Shown: piece by piece, positions 8,693 to 43,160 of the stretch
How positions within the stretch are numbered: position 1 is the stretch's first letter
Layout of the letters: each line of letters starts with the position of its first letter
Source of the DNA: Octopus sinensis
Taxonomy: Eukaryota
Reading direction: 5' to 3'
Assembly: GCF_006345805.1 (NCBI RefSeq)
Contig: NC_043020.1
Span: forward strand, 15,934,001-15,998,000
Length of the DNA: 64,000 nt
The notes under the pieces: generated by a model
The model's input: the letters and a program-made list of their open reading frames with translations, nothing else
Told to the model about the DNA's origin: nothing
Databases searched by the model: none
Program-made: the position numbers and the translations under genes

Positions 8693-9045
8693 TATATTCA
8701 GGTCACTGCCTGGAATCGAACTCAGAATCTTGGGGTTAGTAGCCTGCACTCTTAACCACTATGCCACAGCATATGGTGTAGTGGTTAAGAGCGCAGGCTA
8801 CTAACCCCAAGATTCCAAGTTCGATTCCAGGCAGTGAGCTGAATAATAATAATAATAATAATAATAGTAATAATAATAATAATAATAACAACAACATTGA
8901 AAAATACTTTAGGAATGAGAACCCAGGTTTGAAATTTCCCCAGGACTCCTGATGAAGGCTGGAGGGTATATCAGTCGAAACGTGTTAACAACAAACAAGA
9001 TGAGGACAAATATCCCTCAAATGTAAATAATGTAATAATGTACAA
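8693..9045 (+). mobile_element. tRNA-head element with (AAT)n linker and hammerhead-like tail; head duplicated in inverted orientation
   Basis: A box TGGTGTAGTGG 8774-8784 and B box GTTCGATTCC 8819-8828; inverted head copy 8693-8766; CTGATGA 8949-8955, stem ggctg/cagtc, GAAAC 8977-8981. Confidence 0.7.
8944..8987 (+). ncRNA. Minimal type-I hammerhead ribozyme-like motif (probably degenerate)
   Basis: CUGAUGA-a-GGCUG(loop)CAGUC-GAAAC-GU core. There is one extra A before stem II, and stem I pairing after the cleavage site is imperfect in this copy. Confidence 0.55.
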
Positions 9046-9487: not shown

Positions 9488-9828
9488 TAGGGTGTTCAGG
9501 CTGAATTTGATTGACTGTATAAATGGATAAACAAACACAATATCCAATCCAAAAAGTTTTTTAAAAATCAATAAATATCAACTAGATTATGACTGGGAGG
9601 TAACAGTTTACTCAAAGTAGTTTCCCTCCGCCTCCACCATGGCCTCAGAATGGCTCCATAACCTGGTGCATAAATTCTTCAATGAGTCACTGGTGAGACC
9701 TTAACCACCAGCTCAGTGTTGATGTTGCAGACAGAGCAGTTGAGGTTTTTCTCAACCTCACTGCACACATAGCAATCCATGGGATTACAATTGGGCTGGT
9801 AAAGTCATAGAAGTTCTCCAACAACCAT
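9488..9828 (-). pseudogene. Tc1/mariner (DD37D/maT-like) transposase C-terminus and probable TIR
   Basis: Minus strand reads ...RKSQKWLLENFYDFTSP(deletion)NCNPMDCYVCSEVEKNLNCSVCN...CTRLWSHSEAMVEAEGNYFE* (stop at ~9608-9610); TIR-like tagggtgttcaggctgaatttg at ~9488. Confidence 0.85.
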
Positions 9829-12800
9829 TTCTGACTCTTTCTGTAGGTATGGCAAAGGAGTCAAATCCTTCTGATTCTTTATGAAGGAATGGCAAAGGAG
9901 TCAAATCCTTCTGATTCTTATTGAAGGTATGGCAAAGGAATCAAATCCTTCTGATTCTTTCTGAAGGAATGGCAAAGGAGTCAAATCCTTCCGATTCTTT
10001 CTGAAGGAATGGCAAAGGAGTCAAATCCTTCTGATTCTTATTGAAGGTATGGCAAAGGAATCAAATCCTTCTGATTCTTTCTGAAGGAATGGCAAAGGAG
10101 TCAAATCCTTCCGATTCTTTCTGAAGGAATGGCAAAGGAGTCAAATCCTTCTGACTCTTCCTGAAGGTATGGCAAAGGAGTCAAATCCTTCTGATTCTTT
10201 TTGAAGGTATGGCAAAGGAGTCAAATCCTTCTGACTCTTCCTGAAGGTATGGCAAAGGAGTCAAATCCATCTGACTCTTTCTGAAGGTATGGCAAAGGAG
10301 TCAAATCCTTCTGACTCTTTCTGAAGGTATGGCAAAGGAGTCAAATCCTTCTGATTCTTTCTGAAGGTATGGCAAAGGAGTCAAATCCTTCTGACTTTTC
10401 CTGAAGGTATGACAAAGGAGTCAAATCCTTCTGACTCTTTCTGAAGGTATGGCAAAGGAGTCAAATCCTTCCGATTCTTTCTGAAGGAATGGCAAAGGAG
10501 TCAAATCCTTCTGACTCTTTCTGAAGGTATGGCAAAGGAGTCAAATCCTTCTGACTCTTTCTGAAGGTATGGCAAAGGAGTCAAATCCTTCTGACTCTTT
10601 CTGAAGGTATGGCAAAGGAGTCAAATCCTTCTGATTCTTTCTGAAGGAATGGCAAAGGAGTCAAATCCTTCTGATTCTTTCTGAAGGAATGGCAAAGGAG
10701 TCAAATCCTTCTGACTCTTTCTGAAGGAATGGCAAAGGAGTCAAATCCTTCTGATTCTTTCTGAAGGAATGGCAAAGGAGTCAAATCCTTCTGATTCTTT
10801 TTGAAGGTATGGCAAAGGAGTCAAATCCTTCTGACTCTTTCTGAAGGTATGGCAAAGGAGTCAAATCCTTCTGACTCTTCTGAAGGTATGGCAAAGGAGT
10901 CAAATCCTTCTGACTCTTTCTGAAGGAATGGCAAAGGAGTCAAATCCTTCTGATTCTTTCTGAAGGAATGGCAAAGGAGTCAAATCCTTCTGATTCTTTT
11001 TGAAGGTATGGCAAAGGAGTCAAATCCTTCTGACTCTTTCTGAAGGAATGGCAAAGGAGTCAATTCCTTCTGATTCTTTCTGAAGGAATGGCAAAGGAGT
11101 CAAATCCTTCTGATCTTTTTGAAGGTATGGCAAAGGAGTCAAATCCTTCTGACTCTTTCTGAAGGTATGGCAAAGGAGGCAAATCCTTCTGACTCTTTCT
11201 GAAGGTATGGCAAAGGAGTCAAATCCTTCTGATTCTTTTTGAAGGTATGGCAAAGGAGTCAAATCCTTCTGACTCTTTCTGAAGGTATGGCAAAGGAGTC
11301 AAATCCTTCTGACTCTTTTTGAAGGTATGGCAAAGGAGTCAAATCCTTCTGATTCTTTTTGAAGGTATGGCAAAGGAGTCAAATCCTTCTGATTCTTTCT
11401 GAAGGTATGGCAAAGGAGTCAAATCCTTCTGACTCTTTTTGAAGGTATGGCAAAGGAGTCAAATCCTTCTGATTCTTTTTGAAGGTATGGCAAAGGAGTC
11501 AAATCCTTCTGACTCTTTTTGAAGGTATGGCAAAGGAGTCAAATCCTTCTGACTCTTTTTGAAGGTATGGCAAAGGAGTCAAATCCTTCTGACTCTTTTT
11601 GAAGGTATGGCAAAGGAGTCAAATCCTTCTGACTCTTTTTGAAGGTATGGCAAAGGAGTCAAATCCTTCAGACTCTTCTTGAAGGTATGGCAAAGGAGTC
11701 AAATCCTTCTGATTCTTATTGAAGGTATGGCAAAGGAGTCAAATCCTCTGATTCTTTCTGAAGGTATGGCAAAGGAGTCAAATCCTTCTGACTCTTTTTG
11801 AAGGTATGGCAAAGGAGTCAAATCCTTCTGATTCTTCCTGAAGGTATGGCAAAGGAGTCAAATCCTTCTGACTCTTTCTGAAGGTATGGCAAAGGAGTCA
11901 AATCCTTCTGTCTCTTTCTGAAGGTATGGCAAAGGAGTCAAATCCTCTGACTCTTTCTGAAGGTATGGCAAAGGAGTCAAATCCTTCTGACTCTTCCTGA
12001 AGGTATGGCAAAGGAGTCAAATCCTTCTGATTCTTTTTGAAGGTATGGCAAAGGAGTCAAATCCTTCTGACTCTTTCTGAAGGTATGGCAAAGGAGTCAA
12101 ATACGTCTCTGAATCTTTTTGAAGGTATGGCAAAGGAGTCAAATCTTCTGACTCTTCCTGAAGGTATGGCAAAGGAGTCAAATCCTTCTGACTCTTTCTG
12201 AAGGTATGGCAAAGGAGTCAAATCCTTCTGACTCTTTCTGAAGTATGGCAAAGGAGTCAAATACTTCTGATTCTTTCTGGAGGTATGGCAAAGGAGTCAA
12301 ATCCTTCTGACTCTTTTGAAGGTATGGCAAAGGAGTCAAATCCTTCTGACTCTTCCTGAAGGTATGGCAAAGGAGTCAAATCCTTCTGATTCTTTTTGAA
12401 GGTGTGGCAACGGAGTCAAATCTTCACTCTTCCTGAAGGTATGCCAAAGGAGTCAAATCCTTCTGACTCATTCTGAAGGTATGGCAAAGGAGTCAAATCC
12501 TTCTGACTCTTTCTGAGGTATGGCAAAGGAGTCAAATCCTTCTGACTCTTTCTGAAGGTATGGCAAAGGAGTCAAATCCTTCTGACTCTTTCTGAAGGTA
12601 TGGCAAAGGAGTCAAATCCTTCTGACTCTTTTGAAGGTATGGCAAAGGAGTCAAATCCTTCTGACTCTTTCTGAAGGTATGGCAAAGGAGTCAAATCCTT
12701 CTGATTCTTTCTGAAGTATGGCAAAGGAGTCAATCCTTCTGATTCTTTTTGAAGGTATGGCAAAGGAGTCAAATCCTTCTGACTCTTCCTGAAGGTATGG

Positions 12801-15800
12801 CAAAGGAGTCAAATCCTTCTGACTCTTTCTGAAGGAATGGCAAAGGAGTCAAATCCTTCTGATTCTTTCTGAAGGTATGGCAAAGGAGTCAAATCCTTCT
12901 GACTCTTTTTGAAGGTATGGCAAAGGAGTCAAATCCTTCTGATTCTTTCTGAAGGTATGGCAAAGGAGTCAAATCCTTCTGACTCTTTTTAAAGGAATGG
13001 CAAAGGAGTCAAATCCTTCTGACTCTTCCTGAAGGTATGGCAAAGGAGTCAAATCCTTCTGACTCTTTCTGAAGGTATGGCAAAGGAGTCAAATCCTTCT
13101 GATTCTTTCTGAAGGTGTGGCAAAGGAGTCAAATCCTTCTGACTCTTTTCGAAGGAATGGCAAAGGAGTCAAATCCTTCTGATTCTTTCTGAAGGAATGG
13201 CAAAGGAGTCAAATCCTTCTGATTCTTTCTGAAGGAATGGCAAAGGAGTCAAATCCTTCTGATTCTTTCTGAAGGAATGGCAAAGGAGTCAAATCCTTCT
13301 GATTCTTTCTGAAGGAATGGCAAAGGAGTCAAATCCTTCTGACTCTTCCTGAAGGTATGGCAAAGGAGTCAAATCCTTCTGACTCTTTTTGAAGGAATAG
13401 CAAAGGAGTCAAATCCTTCTGACTCTTTCTGAAGGAATGGCAAAGGAGTCAAATCCTTCTGACTCTTTCTGTAGGTATGGCAAAAGAGTCAAATCCTTCT
13501 GACTCTTTCTGTAGTATGGCAAAGGTGTCAAATCCTTCTGATTCTTTCTGAAGGAATGGCAAAGGAGTCAAATCCTTCTGACTCTTTTTGAAGGAATGGC
13601 AAAGGAGTCAAATCCTTCTGACTCTTTCTGTAGGTATGGCAAAGGTGTCAAATCCTTCTGATTCTTTCTGAAGGAATGGCAAAGGAGTCAAATCCTTCTG
13701 ACTCTTTTTGAAGGAATGGCAAAGGAGTCAAATCCTTCTGACTCCTTTTGAAGGAATGGCAAAGGAGTCAAATCCTTCTGATTCTCTCTGAAGGAATGGC
13801 AAAGGAGTCAAATCCTTCTGATTCTTTCTGAAGGAATGGCAAAGGAGTCAAATCCTTCTGATTCTTTTTGAAAGCATGGCAAAGGAGTCAAATCCTTCTG
13901 ATTCTTTTTGAAAGTATGTCAAAGGAGTCAATCCTTCTGATTCTTTTGAAAGTATGGCAAAGGAGTCAAATCCTTCTGATTCTTTCTGAAGGAATGGCAA
14001 AGGAGTCAAATCCTTCTGGTTCTTTTTGAAAGTATGGCAAAGGAGTCAAATCCTTCTGATTCTTTTTGAAAGTATGGCAAAGGTGTCAAATCCTTCTGAT
14101 TCTTTCTGAAGGAATGGCAAAGGAGTCAAATCCTTCTGACTCTTTTTGAAGGAATGGCAAAGGAGTCAAATCCTTCTGACTCTTTTTGAAGGAATGGCAA
14201 AGGAGTCAAATCCTTCTGACTCTTTTTGAAGGAATGGCAAAGGAGTCAAATCCTTCTGACTCTTTCTGTAGGTATGGCAAAGGTGTCAAATCCGTCTGAT
14301 TCTTTATGAAGGAATGGCAAAGGAGTCAAATCCTTCTGACTCTTTTTGAAGGAATGGCAAAGGAGTCAACCTTCTGACTCCTTTTGAAGGAATGGCAAAG
14401 GAGTCAAATCCTTCTGATTCTTTCTGAAGGAATGGCAAAGGAGTCAAATCCTTCTGATTCTTTTTGAAAGTATGGCAAAGGAGTCAAATCCTTCTGATTC
14501 TTTTGAAAGTATGGCAAAGGAGTCAAATCCTTCTGATTCTTTTTGAAAGTATGGCAAAGGAGTCAAATCCTTCTGATTCTTTTTGAAAGTATGGCAAAGG
14601 AGTCAAATCCTTCTGATTCTTTCTGAAGGAATGGCAAAGGAGTCAAATCCTTCTGATTCTTTCTGAAGGAATGGCAAAGGAGTCAAATCCTTCTGACTCT
14701 TCCTGAAGGTATGGCAAAGGAGTCAAATCCTTCTGACTCTTTTTGAAGGAATAGCAAAGGAGTCAAATCCTTCTGACTCTTTCTGAAGGAATGGCAAAGG
14801 AGTCAAATCCTTCTGACTCTTTCTGTAGGTATGGCAAAAGAGTCAAATCCTTCTGACTCTTTCTGTAGGTATGGCAAAGGTGTCAAATCCTTCTGATCTT
14901 TCTGAAGGAATGGCAAAGGAGTCAAATCCTTCTGACTCTTTTTGAAGGAATGGCAAAGGAGTCAAATCCTTCTGACTCTTTCTGTAGGTATGGCAAAGGT
15001 GTCAAATCCTTCTGATTCTTTCTGAAGGAATGGCAAAGGAGTCAAATCCTTCTGACTCTTTTTGAAGGAATGGCAAAGGAGTCAAATCCTTCTGACTCCT
15101 TTTGAAGGAATGGCAAAGGAGTCAAATCCTTCTGATTCTCTCTGAAGGAATGGCAAAGGAGTCAAATCCTTCTGATTCTTTCTGAAGGAATGGCAAAGGA
15201 GTCAAATCCTTCTGATTCTTTTTGAAAGCATGGCAAAGGAGTCAAATCCTTCTGATTCTTTTTGAAAGTATGTCAAAGGAGTCAAATCCTTCTGATTCTT
15301 TTTGAAAGTATGGCAAAGGAGTCAAATCCTTCTGATTCTTTCTGAAGGAATGGCAAAGGAGTCAAATCCTTCTGGTTCTTTTTGAAAGTATGGCAAAGGA
15401 GTCAAATCCTTCTGATTCTTTTTGAAAGTATGGCAAAGGTGTCAAATCCTTCTGATTCTTTCTGAAGGAATGGCAAAGGAGTCAAATCCTTCTGACTCTT
15501 TTTGAAGGAATGGCAAAGGAGTCAAATCCTTCTGACTCTTTTTCAAAGGAATGGCAAAGGAGTCAAATCCTTCTGACTATTTTTGAAGGAATGGCAAAGG
15601 AGTCAAATCCTTCTGACTCTTTCTGTAGGTATGGCAAAGGTGTCAAATCCGTCTGATTCTTTATGAAGGAATGGCAAAGGAGTCAAATCCTTCTGACTCT
15701 TTTTGAAGGAATGGCAAAGGAGTCAAATCCTTCTGACTCCTTTTGAAGGAATGGCAAAGGAGTCAAATCCTTCTGATTCTTTCTGAAGGAATGGCAAAGG

Positions 15801-18800
15801 AGTCAAATCCTTCTGATTCTTTTTGAAAGTATGGCAAAGGAGTCAAATCCTTCTGATTCTTTTGAAAGTATGGCAAAGGAGTCAAATCCTTCTGATTCTT
15901 TTTGAAAGTATGGCAAAGGAGTCAAATCCTTCTGATTCTTTTTGAAAGTATGGCAAGGAGTCAAATCCTTCTGATTCTTTCTGAAGGAATGGCAAAGGAG
16001 TCAAATCCTTCTGGTTCTTTTTGAAAGTATGGCAAAGGAGTCAAATCCTTCTGATTCTTTTTGAAAGTATGGCAAAGGTGTCAAATCCTTCTGATTCTTT
16101 CTGAAGGAAGGCAAAGGAGTCAAATCCTTCTGACTCTTTTTGAAGGAATGGCAAAGGAGTCAAATCCTTCTGACTCTTTCTGAAGGAATGGCAAAGGAGT
16201 CAAATCCTTCTGACTCTTTCTGTAGGTATGGCAAAGGAGTCAAATCCTTCTGACTCTTTCTGTAGGTATGGCAAAGGTGTCAAATCCTTCTGATTCTTTC
16301 TGAAGGAATGGCAAAGGAGTCAAATCCTTCTGACTCTTTTTGAAGGAATGGCAAAGGAGTCAAATCCTTCTGACTCTTTTTGAAGGAATGGCAAAGGAGT
16401 CAAATCCTTCTGACTCTTTTTGAAGGAATGGCAAAGGAGTCAAATCCTTCTGTCTCTTTCTGAAGGTATGGCAAAGGAGTCAAATCCTTCTGACTCTTTC
16501 TGAAGGTATGGCAAAGGAGTCAAATCCTTCTGACTCTTCCTGAAGGTATGGCAAAGGAGTCAAATCCTTCTGATTCTTTTTGAAGGTATGGCAAAGGAGT
16601 CAAATCCTTCTGACTCTTTCTGAAGGTATGGCAAAAGAGTCAAATACGTCTGACTCTTTTTGAGGTATGGCAAAGGAGTCAAATCCTTCTGACTCTTCCT
16701 GAGGGTATGGCAAAGGAGTCAAATCCTTCTGACTCTTTCTGAAGGTATGGCAAAGGAGTCAAATCCTTCTGACTCTTTCTGAAGGTATGGCAAAGGAGTC
16801 AAATCCTTCTGATTCTTTCTGAAGGTATGGCAAAGGAGTCAAATCCTTCTGACTCTTTTTGAAGGTATGGCAAAGGAGTCAAATCCTTCTGACTCTTCCT
16901 GAAGGTATGGCAAAGGAGTCAAATCCTTCTGATTCTTTTTGAAGGTGTGGCAACGGAGTCAAATCCTTCTGACTCTTCCTGAAGGTATGGCAAAGGAGTC
17001 AAATCCTTCTGACTCTTTCTGAAGGTATGGCAAAGGAGTCAAATCCTTCAGACTCTTTCTGAAGGTATGGCAAAGGAGTCAAATCCTTCTGACTCTTTCT
17101 GAAGGTATGGCAAAGGAGTCAAATCCTTCTGACTCTTTCTGAAGGTATGGCAAAGGAGTCAAATCCTTCTGACTCTTTTTGAAGGTATGGCAAAGGAGTC
17201 AAATCCTTCTGACTCTTTCTGAAGGTATGGCAAAGGAGTCAAATCCTTCTGACTCTTTTTGAAGGTATGGCAAAGGAGTCAAATCCTTCTGATTCTTTCT
17301 GAAGGTATGGCAAAGGAGTCAAATCCTTCTGATTCTTTTTGAAGGTATGGCAAAGGAGTCAAATCCTTCTGACTCTTCCTGAAGGTATGGCAAAGGAGTC
17401 AAATCCTTCTGACTCTTTCTGAAGGAATGGCAAAGGAGTCAAATCCTTCTGATTCTTTCTGAAGGTATGGCAAAGGAGTCAAATCCTTCTGACTCTTTTT
17501 GAAGGTATGGCAAAGGAGTCAAATCCTTCTGATTCTTTCTGAAGGTATGGCAAAGGAGTCAAATCCTTCTGACTCTTTTTAAGGAATGGCAAAGGAGTCA
17601 AATCCTTCTGACTCTTCCTGAAGGTATGGCAAAGGAGTCAAATCCTTCTGACTCTTTCTGAAGTATGGCAAAGGAGTCAAATCCTTCTGATTCTTTCTGA
17701 AGGTGTGGCAAAGGAGTCAAATCCTTCTGACTCTTTTCGAAGGAATGGCAAAGGAGTCAAATCCTTCTGATTCTTTCTGAAGGAATGGCAAAGGAGTCAA
17801 ATCCTTCTGATTCTTTCTGAAGGAATGGCAAAGGAGTCAAATCCTTCTGATTCTTTCTGAAGGAATGGCAAAGGAGTCAAATCCTTCTGATTCTTTCTGA
17901 GGAATGGCAAAGGAGTCAAATCCTTCTGACTCTTCCTGAAGGTATGGCAAAGGAGTCAAATCCTTCTGACTCTTTTTGAAGGAATAGCAAAGGAGTCAAA
18001 TCCTTCTGACTCTTTCTGAAGGAATGGCAAAGGAGTCAAATCCTTCTGACTCTTTCTGTAGGTATGGCAAAAGAGTCAAATCCTTCTGACTCTTTCTGTA
18101 GGTATGGCAAAGGTGTCAAATCCTTCTGATTCTTTCTGAAGGAATGGCAAAGGAGTCAAATCCTTCTGACTCTTTTTGAAGGAATGGCAAAGGAGTCAAA
18201 TCCTTCTGACTCTTTCTGTAGGTATGGCAAAGGTGTCAAATCCTTCTGATTCTTTCTGAAGGAATGGCAAAGGAGTCAAATCCTTCTGACTCTTTTTGAA
18301 GGAATGGCAAAGGAGTCAAATCCTTCTGATTCTTTCTGAAGGAATGGCAAAGGAGTCAAATCCTTCTGATTCTTTTTGAAAGCATGGCAAAGGAGTCAAA
18401 TCCTTCTGATTCTTTTTGAAAGTATGTCAAAGGAGTCAAATCCTTCTGATTCTTTTTGAAAGTATGGCAAAGGAGTCAAATCCTTCTGATTCTTTATGAA
18501 GGAATGGCAAAGGAGTCAAATCCTTCTGATTCTTATTGAAGGTATGGCAAAGGAATCAAATCCTTCTGATTTTTTCTGAAGGAAAGGCAAAGGAGTCAAA
18601 TCCTTCCGATTCTTTCTGAAGGAATGGCAAAGGAGTCAAAACCTTCTGATTCTTTCTGAAGGAATGGCAAAGGAGTCAAATCCTTCTGATTCTTTCTGAA
18701 GGAATGGCAAAGGAGTCAAATCCTTCTGATTCTTTTTGAAAGCATGGCAAAGGAGTCAAATCCTTCTGATTCTTTTTGAAAGTATGTCAAAGGAGTCAAA

Positions 18801-21800
18801 TCCTTCTGATTCTTTTTGAAAGTATGGCAAAGGAGTCAAATCCTTCTGATTCTTTATGAAGGAATGGCAAAGGAGTCAAATCCTTCTGATTCTTATTGAA
18901 GGTATGGCAAAGGAATCAAATCCTTCTGATTTTTTCTGAAGGAAAGGCAAAGGAGTCAAATCCTTCCGATTCTTTCTGAAGGAATGGCAAAGGAGTCAAA
19001 TCCTTCTGATTCTTTCTGAAGGAATGGCAAAGGAGTCAAATCCTTCTGATTCTTTATGAAGGAATGGCAAAGGAGTCAAATCCTTCTGATTCTTATTGAA
19101 GGTATGGCAAAGGAGTCAAATCCTTCTGATTCTTTCTGAAGGAATGGCAAAGGAGTCAAATCCTTCTGATTCTTTCTGAAGGTATGGCAAAGGAGTCAAA
19201 TCCTTCTGACTCTTTCTGAAGGTATGGCAAAGGAGTCAAATCCTTCTGATTCTTTCTGAAGGTATGGCAAAGGAGTCAAATCCTTCTGACTCTTCCTGAA
19301 GGTATGGCAAAGGAGTCAAATCCTTCTGATTCTTTTTGAAGGTATGGCAAAGGAGTCAAATCCTTCTGACTCTTCCTGAAGGTATGGCAAAGGAGTCAAA
19401 TCCATCTGACTCTTTCTGAAGGTATGGCAAAGGAGTCAAATCTTTCTGACTCTTTCTAAAGGTATGGCAAGGAGTCAAATCCTTCTGATTCTTCTGAAGG
19501 TATGGCAAAGGAGTCAAATCCATCTGACTTTTCTGAAGGTATGACAAAGGAGTCAAATCCTTCTGACTCTTTCTGAAGGTATGGCAAAGGAGTCAAATCC
19601 TTCCGATTCTTTCTGAAGGAATGGCAAAGGAGTCAAATCCGTCTGACTCTTTCTGAAGGTATGGCAAAGGAGTCAAATCCTTCTGACTCTTTCTGAAGGT
19701 ATGGCAAAGGAGTCAAATCCTTCTGACTCTTTCTGAAGGTATGGCAAAGGAGTCAAATCCTTCTGATTCTTTCTGAAGGAATGGCAAAGGAGTCAAATCC
19801 TTCTGATTCTTTCTGAAGGAATGGCAAAGGAGTCAAATCCTTCTGACTCTTTCTGAAGGAATGGCAAAGGAGTCAAATCCTTCTGATTCTTTCTGAAGGA
19901 ATGGCAAAGGAGTCAAATCCTTTTGATTCTTTTTGAAGGTATGGCAAAGGAGTCAAATCCTTCTGACTCTTTCTGAAGGTATGGCAAAGGAGTCAAATCC
20001 TTCTGACTCTTTCTGAAGGTATGGCAAAGGAGTCAAATCCTTCTGACTCTTTCTGAAGGAATGGCAAAGGAGTCAAATCCTTCTGATTCTTTCTGAAGGA
20101 ATGGCAAAGGAGTCAAATCCTTCTGATTCTTTTTGAAGGTATGGCAAAGGAGTCAAATCCTTCTGACTCTTTCTGAAGGAATGGCAAAGGAGTCAATTCC
20201 TTCTGATTCTTTCTGAAGGAATGGCAAAGGAGTCAAATCCTTCTGATTCTTTTTGAAGGTATGGCAAAGGAGTCAAATCCTTCTGACTCTTTCTGAAGGT
20301 ATGGCAAAGGAGGCAAATCCTTCTGACTCTTTCTGAAGGTATGGCAAAGGAGTCAAATCCTTCTGATTCTTTTTGAAGGTATGGCAAAGGAGTCAAATCC
20401 TTCTGACTCTTTCTGAAGGTATGGCAAAGGAGTCAAATCCTTCTGATCTTTTTGAAGGTATGGCAAAGGAGTCAAATCCTTCTGATTCTTTTTGAAGGTA
20501 TGGCAAAGGAGTCAAATCCTCTGATTCTTTCTGAAGTATGGCAAAGGAGTCAAATCCTTCTGACTCTTTTTGAAGGTATGGCAAAGGAGTCAAATCCTTC
20601 TGATTCTTTTTGAAGGTATGGCAAAGGAGTCAAATCCTTCTGACTCTTTTTGAAGGTATGGCAAAGGAGTCAAATCCTTCTGACTCTTTTTGAAGGTATG
20701 GCAAAGGAGTCAAATCCTTCTGACTCTTTTTGAAGGTATGGCAAAGGAGTCAAATCCTTCTGACTCTTTTTGAAGGTATGGCAAAGGAGTCAAATCCTTC
20801 AGACTCTTCTTGAAGGTATGGCAAAGGAGTCAAATCCTTCTGATTCTTATTGAAGGTATGGCAAAAGAGTCAAATCCTTCTAATTCTTTCTGAAGGTATG
20901 GCAAAGGAGTCAAATGCTTCTGACTCTTTTTGAAGGTATGGCAAAGGAGTCAAATCCTTCTGACTCTTCCTGAAGGTATGGCAAAGGAGTCAAATCCTTC
21001 TGTCTCTTTCTGAAGGTATGGCAAAGGAGTCAAATCCTTCTGTCTCTTTCTGAAGGTATGGCAAAGGAGTCAAATCCTTCTGACTCTTTCTGAAGGTATG
21101 GCAAAGGAGTCAAATCCTTCTGACTCTTCCTGAAGGTATGGCAAAGGAGTCAAATCCTTCTGATTCTTTTTGAAGGTATGGCAAAGGAGTCAAATCCTTC
21201 TGACTCTTTCTGAAGGTATGGCAAAGGAGTCAAATACGTCTGACTCTTTTTGAAGGTATGGCAAAGGAGTCAAATCCTTCTGACTCTTCCTGAAGGTATG
21301 GCAAAGGAGTCAAATCCTTCTGACTCTTTCTGAAGGTATGGCAAAGGAGTCAAATCCTTCTGACTCTTTCTGAAGGTATGGCAAAGGAGTCAAATCCTTC
21401 TGATTCTTTCTGAAGGTATGGCAAAGGAGTCAAATCCTTCTGACTCTTTTTGAAGGTATGGCAAAGGAGTCAAATCCTTCTGACTCTTCCTGAAGGTATG
21501 GCAAAGGAGTCAAATCCTTCTGATTCTTTTTGAAGGTGTGGCAACGGAGTCAAATCCTTCTGACTCTTCCTGAAGGTATGGCAAAGGAGTCAAATCCTTC
21601 TGACTCTTTCTGAAGGTATGGCAAAGGAGTCAAATCCTTCTGACTCTTTCTGAAGGTATGGCAAAGGAGTCAAATCCTTCTGACTCTTTCTGAAGGTATG
21701 GCAAAGGAGTCAAATCCTTCTGACTCTTTTTGAAGGTATGGCAAAGGAGTCAAATCCTTCTGACTCTTTCTGAAGGTATGGCAAAGGAGTCAAATCCTTC

Positions 21801-24800
21801 TGACTCTTTTTGAAGGTATGGCAAAGGAGTCAAATCCTTCTGATTCTTTCTGAAGGTATGGCAAAGGAGTCAAATCCTTCTGATTCTTTTTGAAGGTATG
21901 GCAAAGGAGTCAAATCCTTCTGACTCTTCCTGAAGGTATGGCAAAGGAGTCAAATCCTTCTGACTCTTTCTGAAGGAATGGCAAAGGAGTCAAATCCTTC
22001 TGATTCTTTCTGAAGGTATGGCAAAGGAGTCAAATCCTTCTGACTCTTTTTGAAGGTATGGCAAAGGAGTCAAATCCTTCTGATTCTTTCTGAAGGTATG
22101 GCAAAGGAGTCAAATCCTTCTGACTCTTTTTAAAGGAATGGCAAAGAAGTCAAATCCTTCTGACTCTTCCTGAAGGTATGGCAAAGGAGTCAAATCCTTC
22201 TGACTCTTTCTGAAGGTATGGCAAAAGAGTCAAATCCTTCTGACTCTTTCTGAAGGAATGGCAAAGGAGTCAAATCCTTCTGACTCTTTTCGAAGGAATG
22301 GCAAAGGAGTCAAATCCTTCTGATTCTTTCTGAAGGAATGGCAAAGGAGTCAAATCCTTCTGATTCTTTCTGAAGGAATGGCAAATGAGTCAAATCCTTC
22401 TGATTCTTTCTGAAGGAATGGCAAAGGAGTCAAATCCTTCTGATTCTTTCTGAAGGAATGGCAAAGGAGTCAAATCCTTCTGACTCTTTTCGAAGGAATG
22501 GCAAAGGAGTCAAATCCTTCTGACACTTTTTGAAGGAATAGCAAAGGAGTCAAATCCTTCTGACTCTTTCTGAAGGAATGGCAAGGAGTCAAATCCTTCT
22601 GACTCTTTCTGTAGGTATGGCAAAAGAGTCAAATCCTTCTGACTCTTTCTGTAGGTATGGCAAAGGTGTCAAATCCTTCTGACTCTTTTTGAAGGAATGG
22701 CAAAGGAGTCAAATCCTTCTGACTCTTTTTGAAGGAATGGCAAAGGAGTCAAATCCTTCTGACTCTTTCTGTAGGTATGGCAAAGGTGTCAAATCCTTCT
22801 GATTCTTTCTGAAGGAATGGCAAAGGAGTCAAATCCTTCTGACTCTTTTTGAAGGAATGGCAAAGGAGTCAAATCCTTCTGACTCCTTTTGAAGGAATGG
22901 CAAGGAGTCAAATCCTTCTGACTCCTTTTGAAGGAATGGCAAAGGAGTCAAATCCTTCTGATTCTCTCTGAAGGAATGGCAAAGGAGTCAATCCTTCTGA
23001 TTCTTTCTGAAGGAATGGCAAAGGAGTCAAATCCTTCTGATTCTTTTTGAAAGTATGGCAAAGGAGTCAAATCCTTCTGATTCTTTTTGAAAGCATGGCA
23101 AAGGAGTCAAATCCTTCTGATTCTTTCTGAAGGTATGGCAAAGGAGTCAAATCCTTCTGATTCTTTTTGAAGGTATGGCAAAGGAGTCAAATCCTTCTGA
23201 CTCTTCCTGAAGGTATGGCAAAGGAGTCAAATCCTTCTGACTCTTTCTGAAGGAATGGCAAAGGAGTCAAATCCTTCTGATTCTTTCTGAAGGTATGGCA
23301 AAGGAGTCAAATCCTTCTGACTCTTTTTGAAGGTATGGCAAAGGAGTCAAATCCTTCTGATTCTTTCTGAAGGTATGGCAAAGGAGTCAAATCCTTCTGA
23401 CTCTTTTTAAAGGAATGGCAAAGGAGTCAAATCCTTCTGACTCTTCCTGAAGGTATGGCAAAGGAGTCAAATCCTTCTGACTCTTTCTGAAGGTGTGGCA
23501 AAGGAGTCAAATCCTTCTGACTCTTTTCGAAGGAATGGCAAAGGAGTCAAATCCTTCTGATTCTTTCTGAAGGAATGGCAAAGGAGTCAAATCCTTCTGA
23601 TTCTTTCTGAAGGAATGGCAAAGGAGTCAAATCCTTCTGATTCTTTCTGAAGGAATGGCAAAGGAGTCAAATCCTTCTGATTCTTTCTGAAGGAATGGCA
23701 AAGGAGTCAAATCCTTCTGACTCTTCCTGAAGGTATGGCAAAGGAGTCAAATCCTTCTGACTCTTTTTGAAGGAATAGCAAAGGAGTCAAATCCTTCTGA
23801 CTCTTTCTGAAGGAATGGCAAAGGAGTCAAATCCTTCTGACTCTTTCTGTAGGTATGGCAAAAGAGTCAAATCCTTCTGACTCTTTCTGTAGGTATGGCA
23901 AAGGTGTCAAATCCTTCTGATTCTTTCTGAAGGAATGGCAAAGGAGTCAAATCCTTCTGACTCTTTTGAAGGAATGGCAAAGGAGTCAAATCCTTCTGAC
24001 TCTTTCTGTAGGTATGGCAAAGGTGTCAAATCCTTCTGATTCTTTCTGAAGGTATGGCAAAGGAGTCAAATCCTTCTGACTCTTTTTGAAGGAATGGCAA
24101 AGGAGTCAAATCCTTCTGACTCCTTTTGAAGGAATGGCAAAGGAGTCAAATCCTTCTGACTCCTTTTGAAGGAATGGCAAAGGAGTCAAATCCTTCTGAT
24201 TCTCTCTGAAGGAATGGCAAAGGAGTCAAATTCTTCTGATTTTTTCTGAAGGAATGGCAAAGGAGTCAAATCCTTCTGATTCTTTTTGAAAGTATGGCAA
24301 AGGAGTCAAATCCTTCTGATTCTTTTTGAAAGCATGGCAAAGGAGTCAAATCCTTCTGATTCTTTTTGAAAGTATGTCAAAGGAGTCAAATCCTTCTGAT
24401 TCTTTTTGAAAGTATGGCAAAGGAGTCAAATCCTTCTGATTCTTTCTGAAGGAATGGCAAAGGAGTCAAATCCTTCTGGTTCTTTTTGAAAGTATGGCAA
24501 AGGAGTCAAATCCTTCTGATTCTTTTTGAAAGTATGGCAAAGGTGTCAAATCCTTCTGATTCTTTCTGAAGGAATGGCAAAGGAGTCAAATCCTTCTGAC
24601 TCTTTTTGAAGGAATGGCAAAGGAGTCAAATCCTTCTGACTCTTTTTGAAGGAATGGCAAAGGAGTCAAATCCTTCTGACTCTTTTTGAAGGAATGGCAA
24701 AGGAGTCAAATCCTTCTGACTCTTTCTGTAGGTATGGCAAAGGTGTCAAATCCGTCTGATTCTTTCTGAAGGAATGGCAAAGGAGTCAAATCCTTCTGAC

Positions 24801-27105
24801 TCTTTTTGAAGGAATGGCAAAGGAGTCAAATCCTTCTGACTCTTTTGAAGGAATGGCAAAGGAGTCAAATCCTTCTGATTCTTTCTGAAGGAATGGCAAA
24901 GGAGTCAAATCCTTCTGATTCTTTTTGAAAGTATGGCAAAGGAGTCAAATCCTTCTGATTCTTTTTGAAAGTATGGCAAAGGAGTCAAATCCTTCTGATT
25001 CTTTTTGAAAGTATGGCAAAGGAGTCAAATCCTTCTGATTCTTTCTGAAGGAATGGCAAAGGAGTCAAATCCTTCTGGTTCTTTTTGAAAGTATGGCAAA
25101 GGAGTCAAATCCTTCTGATTCTTTTTGAAAGTATGGCAAAGGTGTCAAATCCTTCTGATTCTTTCTGAAGGAATGGCAAAGGAGTCAAATCCTTCTGACT
25201 CTTTTTGAAGGAATGGCAAAGGAGTCAAATCCTTCTGACTCTTTCTGAAGGAATGGCAAAGGAGTCAAATCCTTCTGACTCTTTCTGTAGGTATGGCAAA
25301 GGAGTCAAATCCTTCTGACTCTTTCTGTAGGTATGGCAAAGGTGTCAAATCCTTCTGATTCTTTCTGAAGGAATGGCAAAGGAGTCAAATCCTTCTGACT
25401 CTTTTTGAAGGAATGGCAAAGGAGTCAAATCCTTCTGACTCTTTCTGTAGGTATGGCAAAGGTGTCAAATCCTTCTGATTCTTTCTGAAGGAATGGCAAA
25501 GGAGTCAAATCCTTCTGACTCTTTTTGAAGGAATGGCAAAGGAGTCAAATCCTTCTGACTCCTTTTGAAGGAATGGCAAAGGAGTCAAATCCTTCTGATT
25601 CTCTCTGAAGGGATGGCAAAGGAGTCAAATCCTTCTGATTCTTTCTGAAGGAATGGCAAAGGAGTCAAATCCTTCTGATTCTTTTTGAAAGTATGGCAAA
25701 GGAGTCAAATCCTTCTGATTCTTTTTGAAAGCATGGCAAAGGAGTCAAATCCTTCTGATTCTTTTTGAAAGTATGTCAAAGGAGTCAGATCCTTCTGATT
25801 CTTTTTGAAAGTATGGCAAAGGAGTCAAATCCTTCTGATTCTTTCTGAAGGATGGCAAAGGAGTCAAATCCTTCTGGTTCTTTTTGAAGTATGGCAAAGG
25901 AGTCAAATCCTTCTGATTCTTTTGGAAAGTATGGCAAAGTGTCAAATCCTTCTGATTCTTTCTGAAGGAATGGCAAAGGAGTCAAATCCTTCTGACTCTT
26001 TTTGAAGGATGGCAAAGGAGTCAAATCCTTCTGACTCTTTTGAAGGAATGGCAAAGGAGTCAAATCCTTCTGACTCTTTTTGAAGGAATGGCAAAGGAGT
26101 CAAATCCTTCTGACTCTTTCTGTAGGTATGGCAAAGGTGTCAAATCCGTCTGATTCTTTCTGAAGGAATGGCAAAGGAGTCAAATCCTTCTGACTCTTTT
26201 TGAAGGAATGGCAAAGGAGTCAAATCCTTCTGACTCCTTTTGAAGGAATGGCAAAGGAGTCAAATCCTTCTGATTCTTTCTGAAGGAATGGCAAAGGAGT
26301 CAAATCCTTCTGATTCTTTTTGAAAGTATGGCAAAGGAGTCAAATCCTTCTGACTCTTTTTGAAGGTATGGCAAGGAGTCAAATCCTTCTGATTCTTTTT
26401 GAAAGTATGGCAAAGGAGTCAAATCCTTCTGATTCTTTTTGAAAGTATGGCAAAGGAGTCAAATCCTTCTGATTCTTTCTGAAGGAATGGCAAAGGAGTC
26501 AAATCCTTCTGGTTCTTTTTGAAAGTATGGCAAAGGAGTCAAATCCTTCTGATTCTTTTTGAAAGTATCGCAAAGGAGTCAAATCCTTCTGATTCTTTCT
26601 GAAGGTATGGCAAAGGAGTCAAGTCCTTCTGACTCTTTTTGAAGGAATGGCAAAGGAGTCAAATCCTTCTGACTCTTTCTGTAGGTATGGCAAAGGAGTC
26701 AAATCCTTCTGACTCTTTTTGAAGGAATGGCAAAGGAGTCAAATCCTTCTGATTCTTTTTGAAGGAATGGCAAAGGAGTCAAATCCTTCTGATTCTTTTT
26801 GAAGGTACGGCAAAGGAGTCAAATCCTTCTGATTCTTTCTGAAGTATGGCAAAGGAGTCAAATCCTTCTGACTCTTTTTGAAGGAATGGCAAAGGAGTCA
26901 AATCCTTCTGATTCTTTTTGAAGGAATGGCAAAGGAGTCAAATCCTTCTGATTCTTTTTGAAGGTATGGCAAGGGAGTCAAATCCTTCTGATTCTTTCTG
27001 AAGGAATGGCAAAGGAGTCAAATCCTTCTGATTCTTTTTGAAGGTATGGCAAGGGAGTCAAATCCTTCTGACTCTTTCTGAAGGAATGGCAAAGGAGTCA
27101 AATCC
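9829..27105. repeat. 40-bp satellite array (~430 units), consensus GGCAAAGGAGTCAAATCCTTCTGA(C/T)TCTTT(C/T)TGAAGG(T/A)AT
   Basis: Continuous head-to-tail 40-bp periodicity with point variants and occasional 1-bp deletions; no unique spacers. Confidence 0.99.
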
Positions 27106-27235
27106 AGCTGCAAAACATTACCTTCCAACAGCGACCCTCACCAGCCAAGGACTGACTGACCACAGTCTCCAGCAGCTTCACATAGTCATCTGAATTGAGC
27201 CTAAGGCCCTGTTCAAAGACGTGGAGCCAAATTCC
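27106..27235 (-). pseudogene. Same Tc1/mariner transposase, segment upstream of the second catalytic Asp
   Basis: Minus strand, with frameshifts, reads (P)HVFEQGLRLNSDDYVKLLETVV..WLVRVAVGR.(Y)VLQLD, running into the first satellite unit (D-L-T-P..CHT). Confidence 0.85.
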
Positions 27236-27340
27236 CGTGTGCAGACATAGTCAGAATCCCTTTCTGCTGGCTGCAGCCTTGTGCTCTCTGTTGCAACTGC
27301 CTGTGTCCCATCTTACAGCTTTTACAGCATTCACAGAGCA

Positions 27341-27946
27341 TTAACCCTTTCAATACCAACCCGGCTGAAACCGTCTGTGGCTCTGTAGTACAAATGTTTT
27401 GTTTTCATAAGTTTTGAATTAAAATCTTCCATTAAACCTTAGTCACAATTATTGTTCTAAACACTAGCTGAATGATAACGAAGTTCATCATCATCATCAT
27501 CATCGTTTAACGTCCGTTCTCCATGCTAGCATGGGTTGGACAGTTTGACCGGGGATCTGGGGAGCCAGAAGGCTGCACCAGGCTCCAGTCATATCTGGCA
27601 ATGTTTCTACAGCTGGATGCCCTTCCTAGTGTAGTGCGTGCTTTTTACGTGCCACCCCCACAGGTGCCAGGTGAGGCTGGCAACAGCCACGGTCGGATTG
27701 GTGCAATTTACGTGCCACTGGCACGGAAGCCAGTCGAGGCGGCGCTGGCATCGGCCACGATTCGGATAGTGCTTTTTACATACCACCAGTCCAGGGGTCC
27801 TGGCATCTGCCGGGTGCCAGTCATAGGATTGGTTCAATTTCGATTTTGATTTCACTTGTTATTTTACTAAATTCTTTGTTACATTTAAAATTAATTGAAA
27901 GAAACACAGAGTCTCTCAACAGAAACATGGTAACAAAAGTGTTAAA
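27341..27946 (+). mobile_element. piggyBac-like MITE interrupted by a family C SINE (27486-27857)
   Basis: ttaaccctttcaatacc... start; sequence resumes after the SINE with ttattttactaaattctttg...gtgttaa; an uninterrupted sister copy lies at 28014-28240. Confidence 0.7.
27486..27857 (-). mobile_element. SINE-like family C
   Basis: (cat)n cgtttaacgtccgttctccatgctagcatgggttgga...gctggatgcccttcc...ttttacgtgccac repeats. Confidence 0.85.
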
Positions 27947-28013
27947 ACAGATGTAAAAATGAATGATACATAAATATGAAGACACCTTGGGCCACTGCTA
28001 GTTCTTCCCGTCT

Positions 28014-28240
28014 TAACCATTTTGATACCAACCCACCTGAAACCACCTCTGGTTCTGTAGTACTAATGTCTTGTTTTCAAAAGTTCTGAATTATAATCTT
28101 CCACCAAACCTTAGTCACAATTTATGTTCCTAACACTAGCTTAATGATAACTAAGTTATTTTACTAAATTCTTTGTTATATTTAAAGTTACTAAAAGAAA
28201 CACAGAGCATCTCAAAATAAATACAGTAATGAAAGGGTTA
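28014..28240 (+). mobile_element. piggyBac-like MITE
   Basis: ttaaccattttgatacc...gtaatgaaagggttaa; TTAA at both ends; homologous to 27341-27946. Confidence 0.7.
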
Positions 28241-28446
28241 AGCAGCAGTCATGATGTAGGCATTTTACCTGGTGCAAATCATCATGATACAGATGATTCT
28301 TTTCTAGTCTTCAGATAGCTTCTAGTCCTCCATGTCAGCTAACTTGTTCTCAACTACAACTTTAATCATTATGCTCTTCAACACCATCAACTGTTCAGCA
28401 TTATATTAAGCTATTCCCCAAAACGGTGGCATTAAAAAATCATGAA

Positions 28447-28667
28447 ATTTACCCCAAACACCCTTACTCTTTTATTTGTTTCAGTCATTTGATTGTGGCC
28501 ATGCTGGAGCACCACCTTTAATCGAGCAACTCGACCCCGGCACTTATTCTTTGTAAGCCCAGTACTAATTCTATCGGTCTGTTTTGCTGAACCGCTAAGT
28601 GACAGGGACATAAACACACCAGCATCGGTTGTTAAGCAATGCTAGGGAGACAAACACAGACACACAA

Positions 28668-33300: not shown

Positions 33301-33409
33301 CTAAAGTTATATATGATGAAATGAGTAAATCCTTAAAATCCTTTAAAATGTTTCAGCAAGAAAGCTGCAGTCATGCTGGGGCACCACCGTTGATTGTGCT
33401 ACACTAATA

Positions 33410-33790
33410 TGTGAAACCCCCTCTGATACGAGGCACTTGGTCAACAAGGGAGTTTGATGCCACTGCCCGCATCTGTGTTTCCTGCCGAGAAGTAGGTTCA
33501 TCTGGAACCCCTGACAAGAAGAGATTGAGTTTAGTTTTAAAGAAATCCACATCCACACCATGCGGGTCTCTCAGGCATTTAGGAAGGATATTGAAGAGCT
33601 GTGGTCCCCTGAAACCCAAGCTGTTGCAATATCTGGTCCTGTATTTTGATGGTGATGTTGGGATCTTTGGCACCATGCAGTGGCACCCTGTTCTGCTGTT
33701 GGGGTAACTTTCAATGCCAAAATTTGGGACAAGGCCCTCCAGGATTTTCCAGATGTATATCACTGCACATCTCTCCTGCCTCAATTCTAA
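33410..33790 (-). mobile_element. CR1-like LINE ORF2 C-terminal fragment
   Basis: RQERCAVIYIWKILEGLVPN...SLGFRGPQLFNILP...FKTKLNLFLSGVPDEP...SNSLVDQ, typical of the CR1-clade ORF2 C-terminus. Confidence 0.85.
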
Positions 33791-36713: not shown

Positions 36714-37190
36714 TCATCATCATCATCGTTTAGCGTCCGCTTTCCATGCTAGCATGGGTTGGACGGTTCAACTGGGATCTGGGAAGCCAGAAGGCTGCAC
36801 CAGGCAAAGTCTGATCTGGCAATGTTTCTACGGCTGGATGCCCTTCCTAATGCCAACCACTCTGTGAGTGTAGTGGGTGCTTTTTACATGCCACCGGCAC
36901 AGTTGCCAGACAAGGCTGGCAAACGGCCACGACTGGATGGTGCTTTTTATGTGCCACCGGCACGGGGGCCAGGCGAAGCTGGCAATGCCCACGATTGGAT
37001 GGTGCTTTTTACGTGCCACCAGCACGAGGCCAGTCGGGGCGGCACTAGCAACGGCCACATTCGGATGGTTCTCTTACGTACCACTGGCACTGATATCACA
37101 GCTGCAATTTCCATTGATGTTGATCGATTTCGACTTGGATTTTCACTTGCCTCAACAGGTCTTCACAAGTAGAGTTCTGTGTCCCATACA
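36714..37190 (-). mobile_element. SINE-like family C
   Basis: (cat)n cgtttagcgtccgc... with three internal ~60-bp repeats. Confidence 0.85.
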
Positions 37191-42895: not shown

Positions 42896-43160
42896 CAAAC
42901 TTATACAAAAGATGAACCGATGAGTACAACAAACAAACTCCAACTGAACATGGCAAGTCATACACCAATCATTCATCAATATAACAGCTGCTACTGCTTC
43001 TAGCAGTGAATTATAGTGTGGCCACTCTGCACCTACTTGGAGCCATGTAGACTGAGCTATGCAGAGCTAATTACTAAGACAATCATAGACATGAAGCAGA
43101 GCAGCTGAAAGGATGCGAGTGACTTTCGTCTTGGTTACAGTTAACAGCAAAATTCCTTAC

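What the first reader, a model, noticed from the sequence alone, without database searches (positions are those of the whole stretch)
9488..27235. 17-kb satellite born inside a transposase gene, from the catalytic-Asp segment
Seen in sequence: on the minus strand the right flank encodes HVFEQGLRLNSDDYVKLLETVV..WLVRVAVGR..VLQLD. The 40-bp unit reads gat ttg act cct (t) tgc cat acc ttc aga aag agt cag aag = D-L-T-P-CHT-F-RKSQK plus one extra base. The left flank continues WLLENFYDFTSP..NCNPMD..EAMVEAEGNYFE*. Established knowledge: DD37D/maT transposases have ..YVFQQDxAPxHT..SQxWLxENF..WPPNSPDxNPxDY, where QQD holds the second catalytic Asp. Inference: a ~13-codon piece starting at that Asp was amplified ~430-fold in place, with both junctions preserved and cag-nn-g-gat microhomology (cagctggat vs cagaaggat) at the seam. 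This is a rare complete snapshot of satellite origin from a transposon coding sequence.
Basis: partly seen in the sequence, partly recalled or inferred. Interest (0 to 1): 0.88.

Follow-up and report, generated by a model that had tools for sequence, protein, structure and literature searches.

The report
Tandem array born inside dead transposon
A 40-base piece of a long-dead "cut-and-paste" transposon gene was copied head-to-tail 433 times where it sat, making a 17-kb repeat block; this is a clean example of a known way for repetitive DNA to arise, not a new kind of thing.

Summary
Window 9829-27105 is an uninterrupted array of 433 copies of a 40-bp unit (17,277 bp). It lies inside a degenerate maT-like (DD37D) Tc1/mariner element on the minus strand.

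When the array is collapsed to one unit, the element aligns colinearly, with no gap at either seam, to full-length 349-353-aa transposases (tblastn E 2e-20 and 4e-23). It also aligns to three unamplified DNA relatives from other assemblies.

The unit corresponds to codons D254-K266, starting at the second catalytic Asp, plus one inserted T.

It has imperfect 24-nt terminal inverted repeats next to TA, a 409-bp internal deletion that removes the first catalytic Asp, and a nested 897-bp MITE insertion. It was already dead, so the "catalytic Asp" is a positional landmark only.

The array grew further by multi-unit block duplications.

Not established:
- whether this is a true genome-wide satellite or a single-locus array;
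- the claimed microhomology, which is at most 1 nt at the junction;
- the host species.

Satellites derived from transposable elements, including a ~40-bp transposase-fragment satellite in Chenopodium, are already described. This is a new member of a known kind, of moderate interest.

The parts
9488..9489 (.). TA next to the 3' end of the element. It is either the target-site duplication or an eroded terminal CA>TA; the assignment is tentative to within 2 nt.
   Evidence: + strand reads gtgaaTAGGGTGTTCAGG. Relatives end ...ACACCCTG|TA (L001, L002).
9490..9513 (-). 3' terminal inverted repeat (about 24 nt)
   Evidence: matches the L002/L001 terminus GTCAAATTTAGCCCGAACACCCTG with 4 mismatches. 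About 18/24 identical to the 5' TIR.
9490..9828 (-). 3' part of the transposon: C-terminal coding remnant (about aa 267-353 of P0004, frameshifted, with a 25-bp deletion at about 9795 that removes VWPPNSPD), stop codon at 9608-9610, 3' UTR and TIR
9829..27105 (-). Tandem array of 433 units of 40 bp, 42.5% G+C. The unit covers transposase codons D254-K266 (DSAPCHTSGKSQK, now D-L-T-P-[+T]-C-H-T-F-R-K-S-Q-K). Stop codons occur in every frame.
27106..27223 (-). Transposon coding remnant just upstream of the unit (about aa 215-253: HVFEQGLRLNSDDYVKLLETVV / PWLVRVAVGR / VLQL), with two frameshifts and a stop
27223..27230 (-). Junction of an internal deletion. 409 bp present in the intact relative (L004 294-702) are missing here, including the first catalytic Asp (FSDEK).
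27231..27344 (-). N-terminal coding remnant, second piece (CSVNAVKAVRWDTGSCNREHKAAASRK, about aa 38-64)
27345..28241 (.). Nested insertion (897 bp plus a duplicated TTAA). It is a composite of two ~230-bp MITE copies with outer TIRs TTAACCCTTTCAATAC/GTAATGAAAGGGTTAA. The first copy is interrupted at 27486-27857 by another repeat.
   Evidence: Removing it restores colinearity with L004 (...GCTGCTTAATGCTCTG...) and with P0004 aa 36|38.
28242..28464 (-). 5' part of the transposon: 5' TIR (AGGGTGTTTGGGGTAAATTTCAT, 28464-28442), leader, and first coding remnant (MED*KLSED*KRIICIMMI..YIMTAA, aa 5-36)
28465..28466 (.). TA next to the 5' end (putative target-site duplication)
   Evidence...aaagagTA|AGGGTGTTTGGGG

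Best explanation
A maT-like (DD37D) Tc1/mariner DNA transposon inserted here in minus orientation and decayed into a pseudogene. The damage includes a 409-bp internal deletion, frameshifts, stop codons, a 25-bp deletion and a nested MITE insertion. A 40-bp stretch of its coding remnant then duplicated in tandem at this spot. That stretch covers the codons from the second catalytic Asp to the Lys before WL(S/L)ENF, and it already carried a 1-nt insertion and several C>T/G>A changes. The array then expanded to 433 copies (17.3 kb). The first duplication needed little or no junctional homology, so I infer replication slippage or end-joining repair. I infer that later growth came from unequal exchange or replication-based duplication of single units, and then of blocks of tens to hundreds of units. 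The array encodes nothing, and the position at the catalytic Asp is incidental. Directly shown: the array, its exact seams, the homology of the unit and both flanks to one transposase, the dead state of the host copy, and the block duplications. Inferred: the order of events, the molecular mechanism, and that this locus is where the array was born.
For: Array. Colinearity through one unit, protein level: E 1.8e-20 and 4e-23; the unit's Asp sits in the invariant D254 column; the conceptual peptide is 55% identical to P0004. Colinearity at DNA level, no gap at either seam: L001, L002; L004, about 82% identity at aligned positions; the unit consensus differs from the L004 segment by 5 transitions and 1 inserted T. 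Relatives carry a single copy of the segment: P0001, P0002, L004. Family identity: 1468 homologues, full-length 347-353 aa with DDE_3 and HTH domains; a match to the Sleeping Beauty catalytic domain 5cr4 at E 1.5e-7, aligning QQD with SB's QHD motif and NSMD with SB's NPIE motif, which from my own knowledge of SB are D244 and E279; D2-D3 spacer 37. The founder unit was already broken: 423/433 units carry the extra T. At the polymorphic columns the majority consensus equals the outgroup state, and both edge units differ from the consensus by only 1 nt. Growth by block duplication: blocks of 12-33 units recur at lags of 34, 114/115 and 229 units with 99.4-100% identity. The unit and flanks are absent from the rest of the window.
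Against: The conceptual peptide from the window alone gets no Pfam hit; the family assignment rests on better-preserved relatives. The source genome could not be searched, so 'born here' rather than 'copied here from another locus carrying the same element and array' is not proven. The junction shows no convincing microhomology that would point to a mechanism. The array length depends on an assembly I cannot check against reads.
Confidence: 0.85

Rival explanations
1. The amplification did not start at this locus. A non-autonomous, internally deleted maT derivative carrying one or a few copies of the 40-bp repeat spread by transposition or segmental duplication, as with the Xenopus miDNA4 MITE and its internal satellite. 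This locus would then be one of several arrays of a dispersed family, possibly homogenised among loci.
For: The copy keeps both TIRs and is internally deleted like a typical non-autonomous derivative. Such MITE-satellite composites are documented for Tc1/mariner (PMC12628747, PMC9659126). A relative in another genome (L003) has a 3x 66-bp tandem repeat over the same codons, so this segment may duplicate recurrently.
Against: There is no second copy of the unit or the flanks in 64 kb. Four relatives examined across this segment have a single unit: L001, L002 and L004 at DNA level and P0091 of L005 at protein level only. A 19-kb element is unlikely to transpose. Nothing was found in the JGI metagenome contigs or in the protein collection, though those sources barely sample animal genomes.
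Confidence: 0.2
2. An unrelated, pre-existing satellite inserted into or recombined with a transposon remnant.
For: None found.
Against: The unit is homologous to the transposon at exactly the position of the array: 35/40 identical to L004, with 'TFRKSQK' identical to P0002. Flank-unit-flank reconstitutes a contiguous transposase alignment, with no lost or extra bases at either seam.
Confidence: 0.02
3. The array is real, but its length or internal organisation is an assembly artefact (a collapsed or expanded tandem repeat).
For: Tandem arrays of short units are hard to assemble. Internal blocks are 99.4-100% identical over 0.5-1.3 kb.
Against: The 102 unit variants are arranged in long, non-periodic and only partly repeated orders, which gives unique anchors. 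No exact long duplicates were seen. Both seams are clean.
Confidence: 0.08

Closest known systems
Chenopodium CficCl-61-40 satellite, derived from the tnp2 transposase domain of the CACTA-like transposon Jozin (PMC7320549)
   Same: A fragment of about 40 bp from a class II transposase coding region serves as the starting monomer of a tandem array that directly abuts the transposase remnant.
   Different: Plant versus animal. CACTA versus Tc1/mariner (maT). In Chenopodium it is the major genome-wide satellite, arising repeatedly from many elements; here only one locus is known, and both junctions lie inside one element.
Xenopus miDNA4, a Tc1/mariner MITE with an internal satellite (described in PMC12628747 and PMC9659126)
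   Same: A Tc1/mariner-type non-autonomous element bounded by TIRs, with an internal tandem repeat of variable copy number.
   Different: For miDNA4 the authors propose capture of a pre-existing tandem repeat, and the repeat is not transposase coding sequence. Here the unit is the element's own coding remnant. Dispersal of this element is unknown.
Bari1 heterochromatic cluster of Drosophila melanogaster (summarised in PMC9659126)
   Same: Tandem amplification of Tc1/mariner-superfamily sequence at a single locus.
   Different: In Bari1 the repeat unit is the whole element (about 80 copies). Here it is a 40-bp internal fragment.
Satellites derived from retrotransposon or foldback-element internal repeats (Ogre/LTR-derived arrays, PMC7004042; Tetris, PMC4079207)
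   Same: Short tandem repeats inside a transposable element expand into long satellite-like arrays, and the parent-element junctions are sometimes visible in long reads.
   Different: Those arise mostly from non-coding, already repetitive parts of the element (UTRs, TIRs, LTRs). Reviews note that a coding origin is the less common case (PMC9659126).

Membership tests
maT / DD37D family of Tc1/mariner transposons | Catalytic triad DD37D (37 residues between the 2nd and 3rd Asp) (bioRxiv 10.1101/2022.10.13.512200) | tested here: met
   Met in the relatives to which the window copy is colinear: P0004 has D162/D254/D292 with a spacer of 37, and there are no indels in that stretch among P0003/4/6/11/18. 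The L002 protein aligns its 2nd and 3rd acidic residues to the QHD and NPIE motifs of the Sleeping Beauty catalytic domain, which are SB D244 and E279 from my own knowledge. The window copy is a relic: the 1st Asp is deleted, the 2nd is present in each unit, the 3rd (NPMD) is present, and the spacing is broken by a 25-bp deletion.
maT / DD37D family of Tc1/mariner transposons | Element of about 1.3 kb encoding a transposase of about 346 aa | tested here: met
   Full-length relatives are 347-353 aa on contigs of 1.25-1.6 kb. L004 is 1292 bp with an intact 349-aa ORF. The window copy, without the array and the nested insertion, is about 0.8 kb because of the 409-bp deletion.
maT / DD37D family of Tc1/mariner transposons | Terminal inverted repeats of 13-48 bp and a TA target-site duplication | tested here: met
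   TIRs of about 24 nt, about 18/24 identical to each other and matching the termini of L001/L002. TA lies next to both ends, but the terminal 1-2 nt are eroded, so the TSD call is tentative.
maT / DD37D family of Tc1/mariner transposons | N-terminal PAIRED-type helix-turn-helix DNA-binding domain | tested here: met
   Relatives carry PF01498, PF13384 or PF13412 hits. The window retains remnants of aa 5-64.
maT / DD37D family of Tc1/mariner transposons | Phylogenetic placement within the maT clade together with reference elements | not tested
   No reference maT sequences were at hand. The only named hits are Anopheles 'Tc1-like transposase DDE domain-containing protein' and Caligus 'Tcb2 transposase'.
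Satellite DNA derived from a transposable element | Long head-to-tail array of near-identical monomers | tested here: met
   433 units, 17,277 bp, 93% matches.
Satellite DNA derived from a transposable element | The monomer is homologous to a defined segment of a transposable element | tested here: met
   The unit corresponds to codons D254-K266 of the transposase and is 35/40 identical to L004.
Satellite DNA derived from a transposable element | High genomic abundance or multiple arrays (satellite in the strict sense) | not testable with these tools
   The source genome is not available here. There is no other copy in the window, none in the JGI metagenome contigs, and no ORFs derived from the array in the protein collection. 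None of these sources samples the host genome.
Non-autonomous Tc1/mariner element with internal tandem repeats (miDNA4 type) | Many dispersed copies with a variable number of internal repeats | not testable with these tools
   Only this copy is visible. L001, L002 and L004 (DNA) and P0091 of L005 (protein only) carry one unit.

The most novel reading that the evidence does not exclude
This locus is the actual birthplace of a lineage-specific satellite family that has since spread, or is starting to spread, through the host genome. In addition, the stretch around the second catalytic Asp of maT elements may be a recurrent hotspot for tandem duplication: a relative in another genome independently carries a 3x 66-bp repeat over the same codons. 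If so, the unamplified orthologous locus in sister species would allow the birth of a satellite and its expansion rate to be dated.
Probability: 0.12. Interest if true: 0.55.

Novelty: new member of a known kind. Interest (0 to 1): 0.3.

Why it matters
The origin of a satellite can rarely be traced, because arrays diverge quickly and their junctions are lost. Here both junctions, the parent element and outgroup copies are all available. That gives the founder sequence, its state at the time of amplification (already a pseudogene), and the mode of growth (block duplications). This makes the locus a useful worked example, and it is a coding-sequence origin from a Tc1/mariner element, which the reviews consulted here do not list. 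It does not change the current view that transposable elements seed tandem repeats. Its weight depends on whether the 40-mer is abundant elsewhere in the genome, which could not be tested.

Tried and rejected
- Pfam and PDB searches with the window's frameshift-corrected peptide gave no significant hit. The family was reached only through relatives.
- A dyad symmetry in the unit (GACTCCTTT...AAAGAGTC) looked like a possible slippage-promoting hairpin. Its folding energy is no better than that of shuffled sequences (z -0.66 and -0.94), so I dropped it.
- Microhomology at the seams: CAGCTG against CAGAAG is 4/6, and the true junctional overlap is at most 1 nt (G, if 9828 was G as in L001/L002/L004). 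I do not treat this as evidence for a mechanism.
- L001 as a possible orthologous unamplified locus: its flanks share nothing with the window, so it is a paralogue or comes from another species.
- Looking for the satellite elsewhere: an exact 27-mer scan of the JGI metagenome contigs found 0 hits; a protein search with all array reading frames found no candidates; exact look-ups of one seam-spanning ORF at each seam (27038-27193 + and 9785-9904 -), of a 3'-flank ORF and of two other window ORFs found nothing on record. These are weak negatives, because the collections hardly cover the host genome.
- Rfam and tRNA scans of the window found nothing.
- Literature on octopus satellites: nothing relevant was found. 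The sample accessions of the relatives were not found in any paper, so neither the host species of the window nor those of the relatives were identified.
Full report
**Observation**

Tandem Repeats Finder reports a single large array at 9829-27105, with period 40, 433.0 copies, 93% matches and no indel signal. I segmented it by wrap-around alignment to the consensus. This gives:
- 433 units and 102 distinct variants;
- 42 units with a 1-nt gap and 2 with an insertion;
- nothing foreign inside the 17,277 bp.

The mean pairwise difference between units is 2.83/40. Only seven columns are appreciably polymorphic: 10, 21, 23, 25, 28, 29 and 34. On the minus strand the consensus is GGATTTGACTCCTTTGCCATACCTTCAGAAAGAGTCAGAA (42.5% G+C). 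This is the reading the first-stage reader gave. Neither the unit nor either flank recurs elsewhere in the window.

**What the flanks are**

The frameshift-corrected peptide from the window alone finds nothing in Pfam or the PDB. In the large protein collection it finds two short ORFs, P0001 and P0002. They read straight through the seam region with a single copy of the segment...GRPFVWQQDSASCHTAGKTQKWLSENFYDFTSPNV and ...GRPYVWHQDSAPWNTFRKSQKWLSENFYDFTSLNF.

The better-preserved copy on the P0001 contig (L002) gave a 212-aa conceptual protein with these results:
- It hits Pfam DDE_3 (E 4e-5, below the gathering score).
- It hits the Sleeping Beauty catalytic domain 5cr4 (E 1.5e-7). Its QQD motif aligns with SB's QHD and its NSMD with SB's NPIE, which from my own knowledge of SB are the catalytic residues D244 and E279.
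- It retrieves 1468 homologues. The full-length ones are 347-353 aa, carry DDE_3 and HTH_Tnp_Tc3_2-type domains, and sit on contigs of about 1.3 kb.

In P0004 the catalytic residues are D162, D254 and D292, with 37 residues between the second and third. This is the DD37D signature that defines maT, along with a length of about 1.3 kb, a transposase of about 346 aa and TIRs of 13-48 bp (bioRxiv 10.1101/2022.10.13.512200).

**The colinearity test**

I replaced the array by its last unit and ran tblastn with P0004 and P0003. The hits are colinear:

| P0004 residues | Window coordinates |
|---|---|
| aa 5-36 | 28333-28241 |
| aa 38-64 | 27340-27260 |
| aa 215-282 | 27223, through the unit, to 9780 |
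| aa 286-321 | 9795-9688 |
| aa 324-353 | 9700-9611, followed by the stop at 9608-9610 |

The E-values are 1.8e-20 (P0004) and 4e-23 (P0003).

At DNA level the same construct aligns without a gap at either seam to three unamplified relatives: L001 and L002 and L004. L004 is a 1292-bp contig with an intact 349-aa ORF (P0005) and is the closest relative, about 82% identical at aligned positions.

In a protein alignment, the Asp at the start of the unit falls in the invariant D254 column.

Against L004, the unit consensus differs by five transitions, all C>T or G>A in the window, and one inserted T. That is 35/40 identical, which is as close as the flanks are. The unit is therefore the element's own sequence at that position, not an inserted foreign satellite.

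**Full anatomy (minus strand is the element's sense strand)**

The element runs from about 28464 to about 9490, not to 27235.
- It has imperfect TIRs of about 24 nt, about 18/24 identical to each other and matching the termini of L001/L002. TA lies next to both ends. The last 1-2 nt are eroded, so the TSD call is tentative.
- A nested 897-bp composite MITE with a TTAA duplication and TIRs TTAACCCTTTCAATAC/GTAATGAAAGGGTTAA sits at 27345-28241. Removing it restores colinearity with both L004 and P0004.
- Relative to L004, 409 bp (L004 294-702) are missing at 27223-27230, which removes the first catalytic Asp.
- A 25-bp deletion at about 9795 removes VWPPNSPD.
- There are also several frameshifts and stop codons.

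The host copy is a long-dead, internally deleted element.

**State of the founder and growth of the array**

The extra T that breaks the reading frame is present in 423 of 433 units. The five transitions relative to L004 are in the consensus. The simplest reading is that the amplified piece was already pseudogene sequence.

At the polymorphic columns the majority base equals the outgroup base, so the consensus approximates the founder. Both edge units differ from the consensus by one base.

The order of unit variants is not a simple higher-order repeat. Blocks of 12-33 units recur at lags of 34, 114/115 and 229 units with 99.4-100% identity, and longer motif strings recur up to four times. The array therefore grew partly by duplication of blocks of tens to hundreds of units. 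This is what unequal exchange produces, though that mechanism is an inference.

Every reading frame of the array is closed within 40 codons, so the array has no coding potential.

**The seams and the mechanism of the first duplication**

In element sense, the 5' seam reads ...TTTTGCAGCT|GGATTTG, internal junctions read ...TCAGAA|GGATTTG, and the 3' seam reads ...TCAGAA|ATGGTTG. The relatives have CAGCGG GAT or CAGCAA GAT upstream and CAGAAG TGG downstream.

This means 9828 was probably G, and the duplicated segment is bounded by a shared G. True junctional homology is therefore at most 1 nt, set within CAGnnG/CAGnnG (4/6). I do not regard this as evidence for microhomology-mediated origin.

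A dyad in the unit does not fold better than shuffled controls.

The first step (slippage or an end-joining duplication) remains inferred.

**What could not be tested**

Whether the 40-mer exists elsewhere in the host genome is the main open point.
- The available collections barely sample animal genomes.
- The exact-pattern scan of the JGI metagenome contigs, a protein search with all array frames and exact look-ups of window ORFs, including one seam-spanning ORF at each seam, all returned nothing. These are weak negatives.
- L001 is not an orthologous locus.
- The host species was not identified. The 'octopod' attribution is untested.

**Comparison with what is known**

It is well established that transposable elements seed tandem repeats and satellites (reviews PMC9659126 and PMC12628747). 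Most cases come from TIRs, LTRs or UTRs. Coding-region origins are listed mainly for LINE ORF2 and gag.

One case among DNA transposons is strikingly parallel. In Chenopodium, a fragment of about 40 bp from the tnp2 transposase domain of the CACTA-like element Jozin is the start monomer of the major CficCl-61-40 satellite (PMC7320549).

For Tc1/mariner, the cases listed in those two reviews are the Bari1 whole-element cluster, the Xenopus miDNA4 MITE with an internal satellite, and a mariner found inside ant satellite DNA. An origin from a Tc1/mariner transposase coding sequence is not in those lists.

The present locus is therefore a new member of a known kind, and an unusually complete one.

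**Seen in passing**

This is P0025, on a 1.1-Mb contig from another assembly (L003). The repeat is a 66-bp unit present three times at 98% identity, reading NGRPYVWKQDSSPCHTSDNKGS. It also spans the second catalytic Asp and overlaps the window's unit by eight codons.

A single random 22-aa duplication would overlap a given 13-aa stretch about one time in ten. The protein-based scan also cannot see out-of-frame repeats.

**Verdict**

The element boundary, the microhomology claim, the functional meaning of the Asp, the 'satellite' status and the rarity claim need correcting or remain open.

Interest is moderate.

Noticed in passing
L003 6396-6595 (ENA ERZ26859072 ctg12645_122x_l): A relative of the same maT-like transposase (P0025) in another genome carries a 66-bp x 3.0 tandem repeat (98% matches), reading NGRPYVWKQDSSPCHTSDNKGS three times. 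It spans the same second catalytic Asp and overlaps the window's unit by 8 codons. It is the only internal tandem repeat found among the 122 relatives scanned at protein level. It could mark a duplication hotspot or be coincidence (about 1 in 10 by chance).
   Followed up: partly
window 27345-28241: A composite insertion nested in the transposon, with a TTAA duplication. Two ~230-bp MITE copies (27341-27945 and 28013-28241) have outer TIRs TTAACCCTTTCAATAC/GTAATGAAAGGGTTAA. The first copy is interrupted at 27486-27857 by a repeat that has a (CAT)n head and 63-68-bp subrepeats (GTGCTTTTTACGTGCCACC...). Similar subrepeats form arrays at 36876-37033 and 57144-57440.
   Followed up: partly
window 8695-8845: A near-perfect palindrome with 72-nt arms (92% complementary) and a 7-nt spacer. 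It is made of two inverted tRNA-like SINE heads and is followed by an (AAT)n run. ARAGORN calls no tRNA there.
   Followed up: partly
window 49315-49359 (+) and 63002-63145 (+): Weak remnants of other Tc1/mariner transposases, apparently from a different family (PPYSPDLAPTDYHFF; LFHQDNAPAHKS). The tblastn E-values are above 1, so these are hints only.
   Followed up: no
window 33404-33784 (-) and 51278-51637 (+): ORFs of 126 and 119 aa that I judged, by eye only, to resemble C-terminal tails of non-LTR retrotransposon proteins; no family search was run on them. No exact match for either is on record in the gene collection. The window otherwise lacks long ORFs and is dense in (TA)n/(CA)n microsatellites and 22-66-bp minisatellites, for example at 42265-42901 and 46777-46958.
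   Followed up: no
L004 (ENA ERZ23491055 scaffold_189805, 1292 bp): An apparently intact copy (349-aa ORF, P0005) of the subfamily closest to the window's dead element, assembled in a sample labelled as a metagenome. L001 and L005 come from a single 'metagenome' sample (ERZ21867824) and carry decayed copies. These contigs look like animal host DNA within metagenome assemblies.
   Followed up: no
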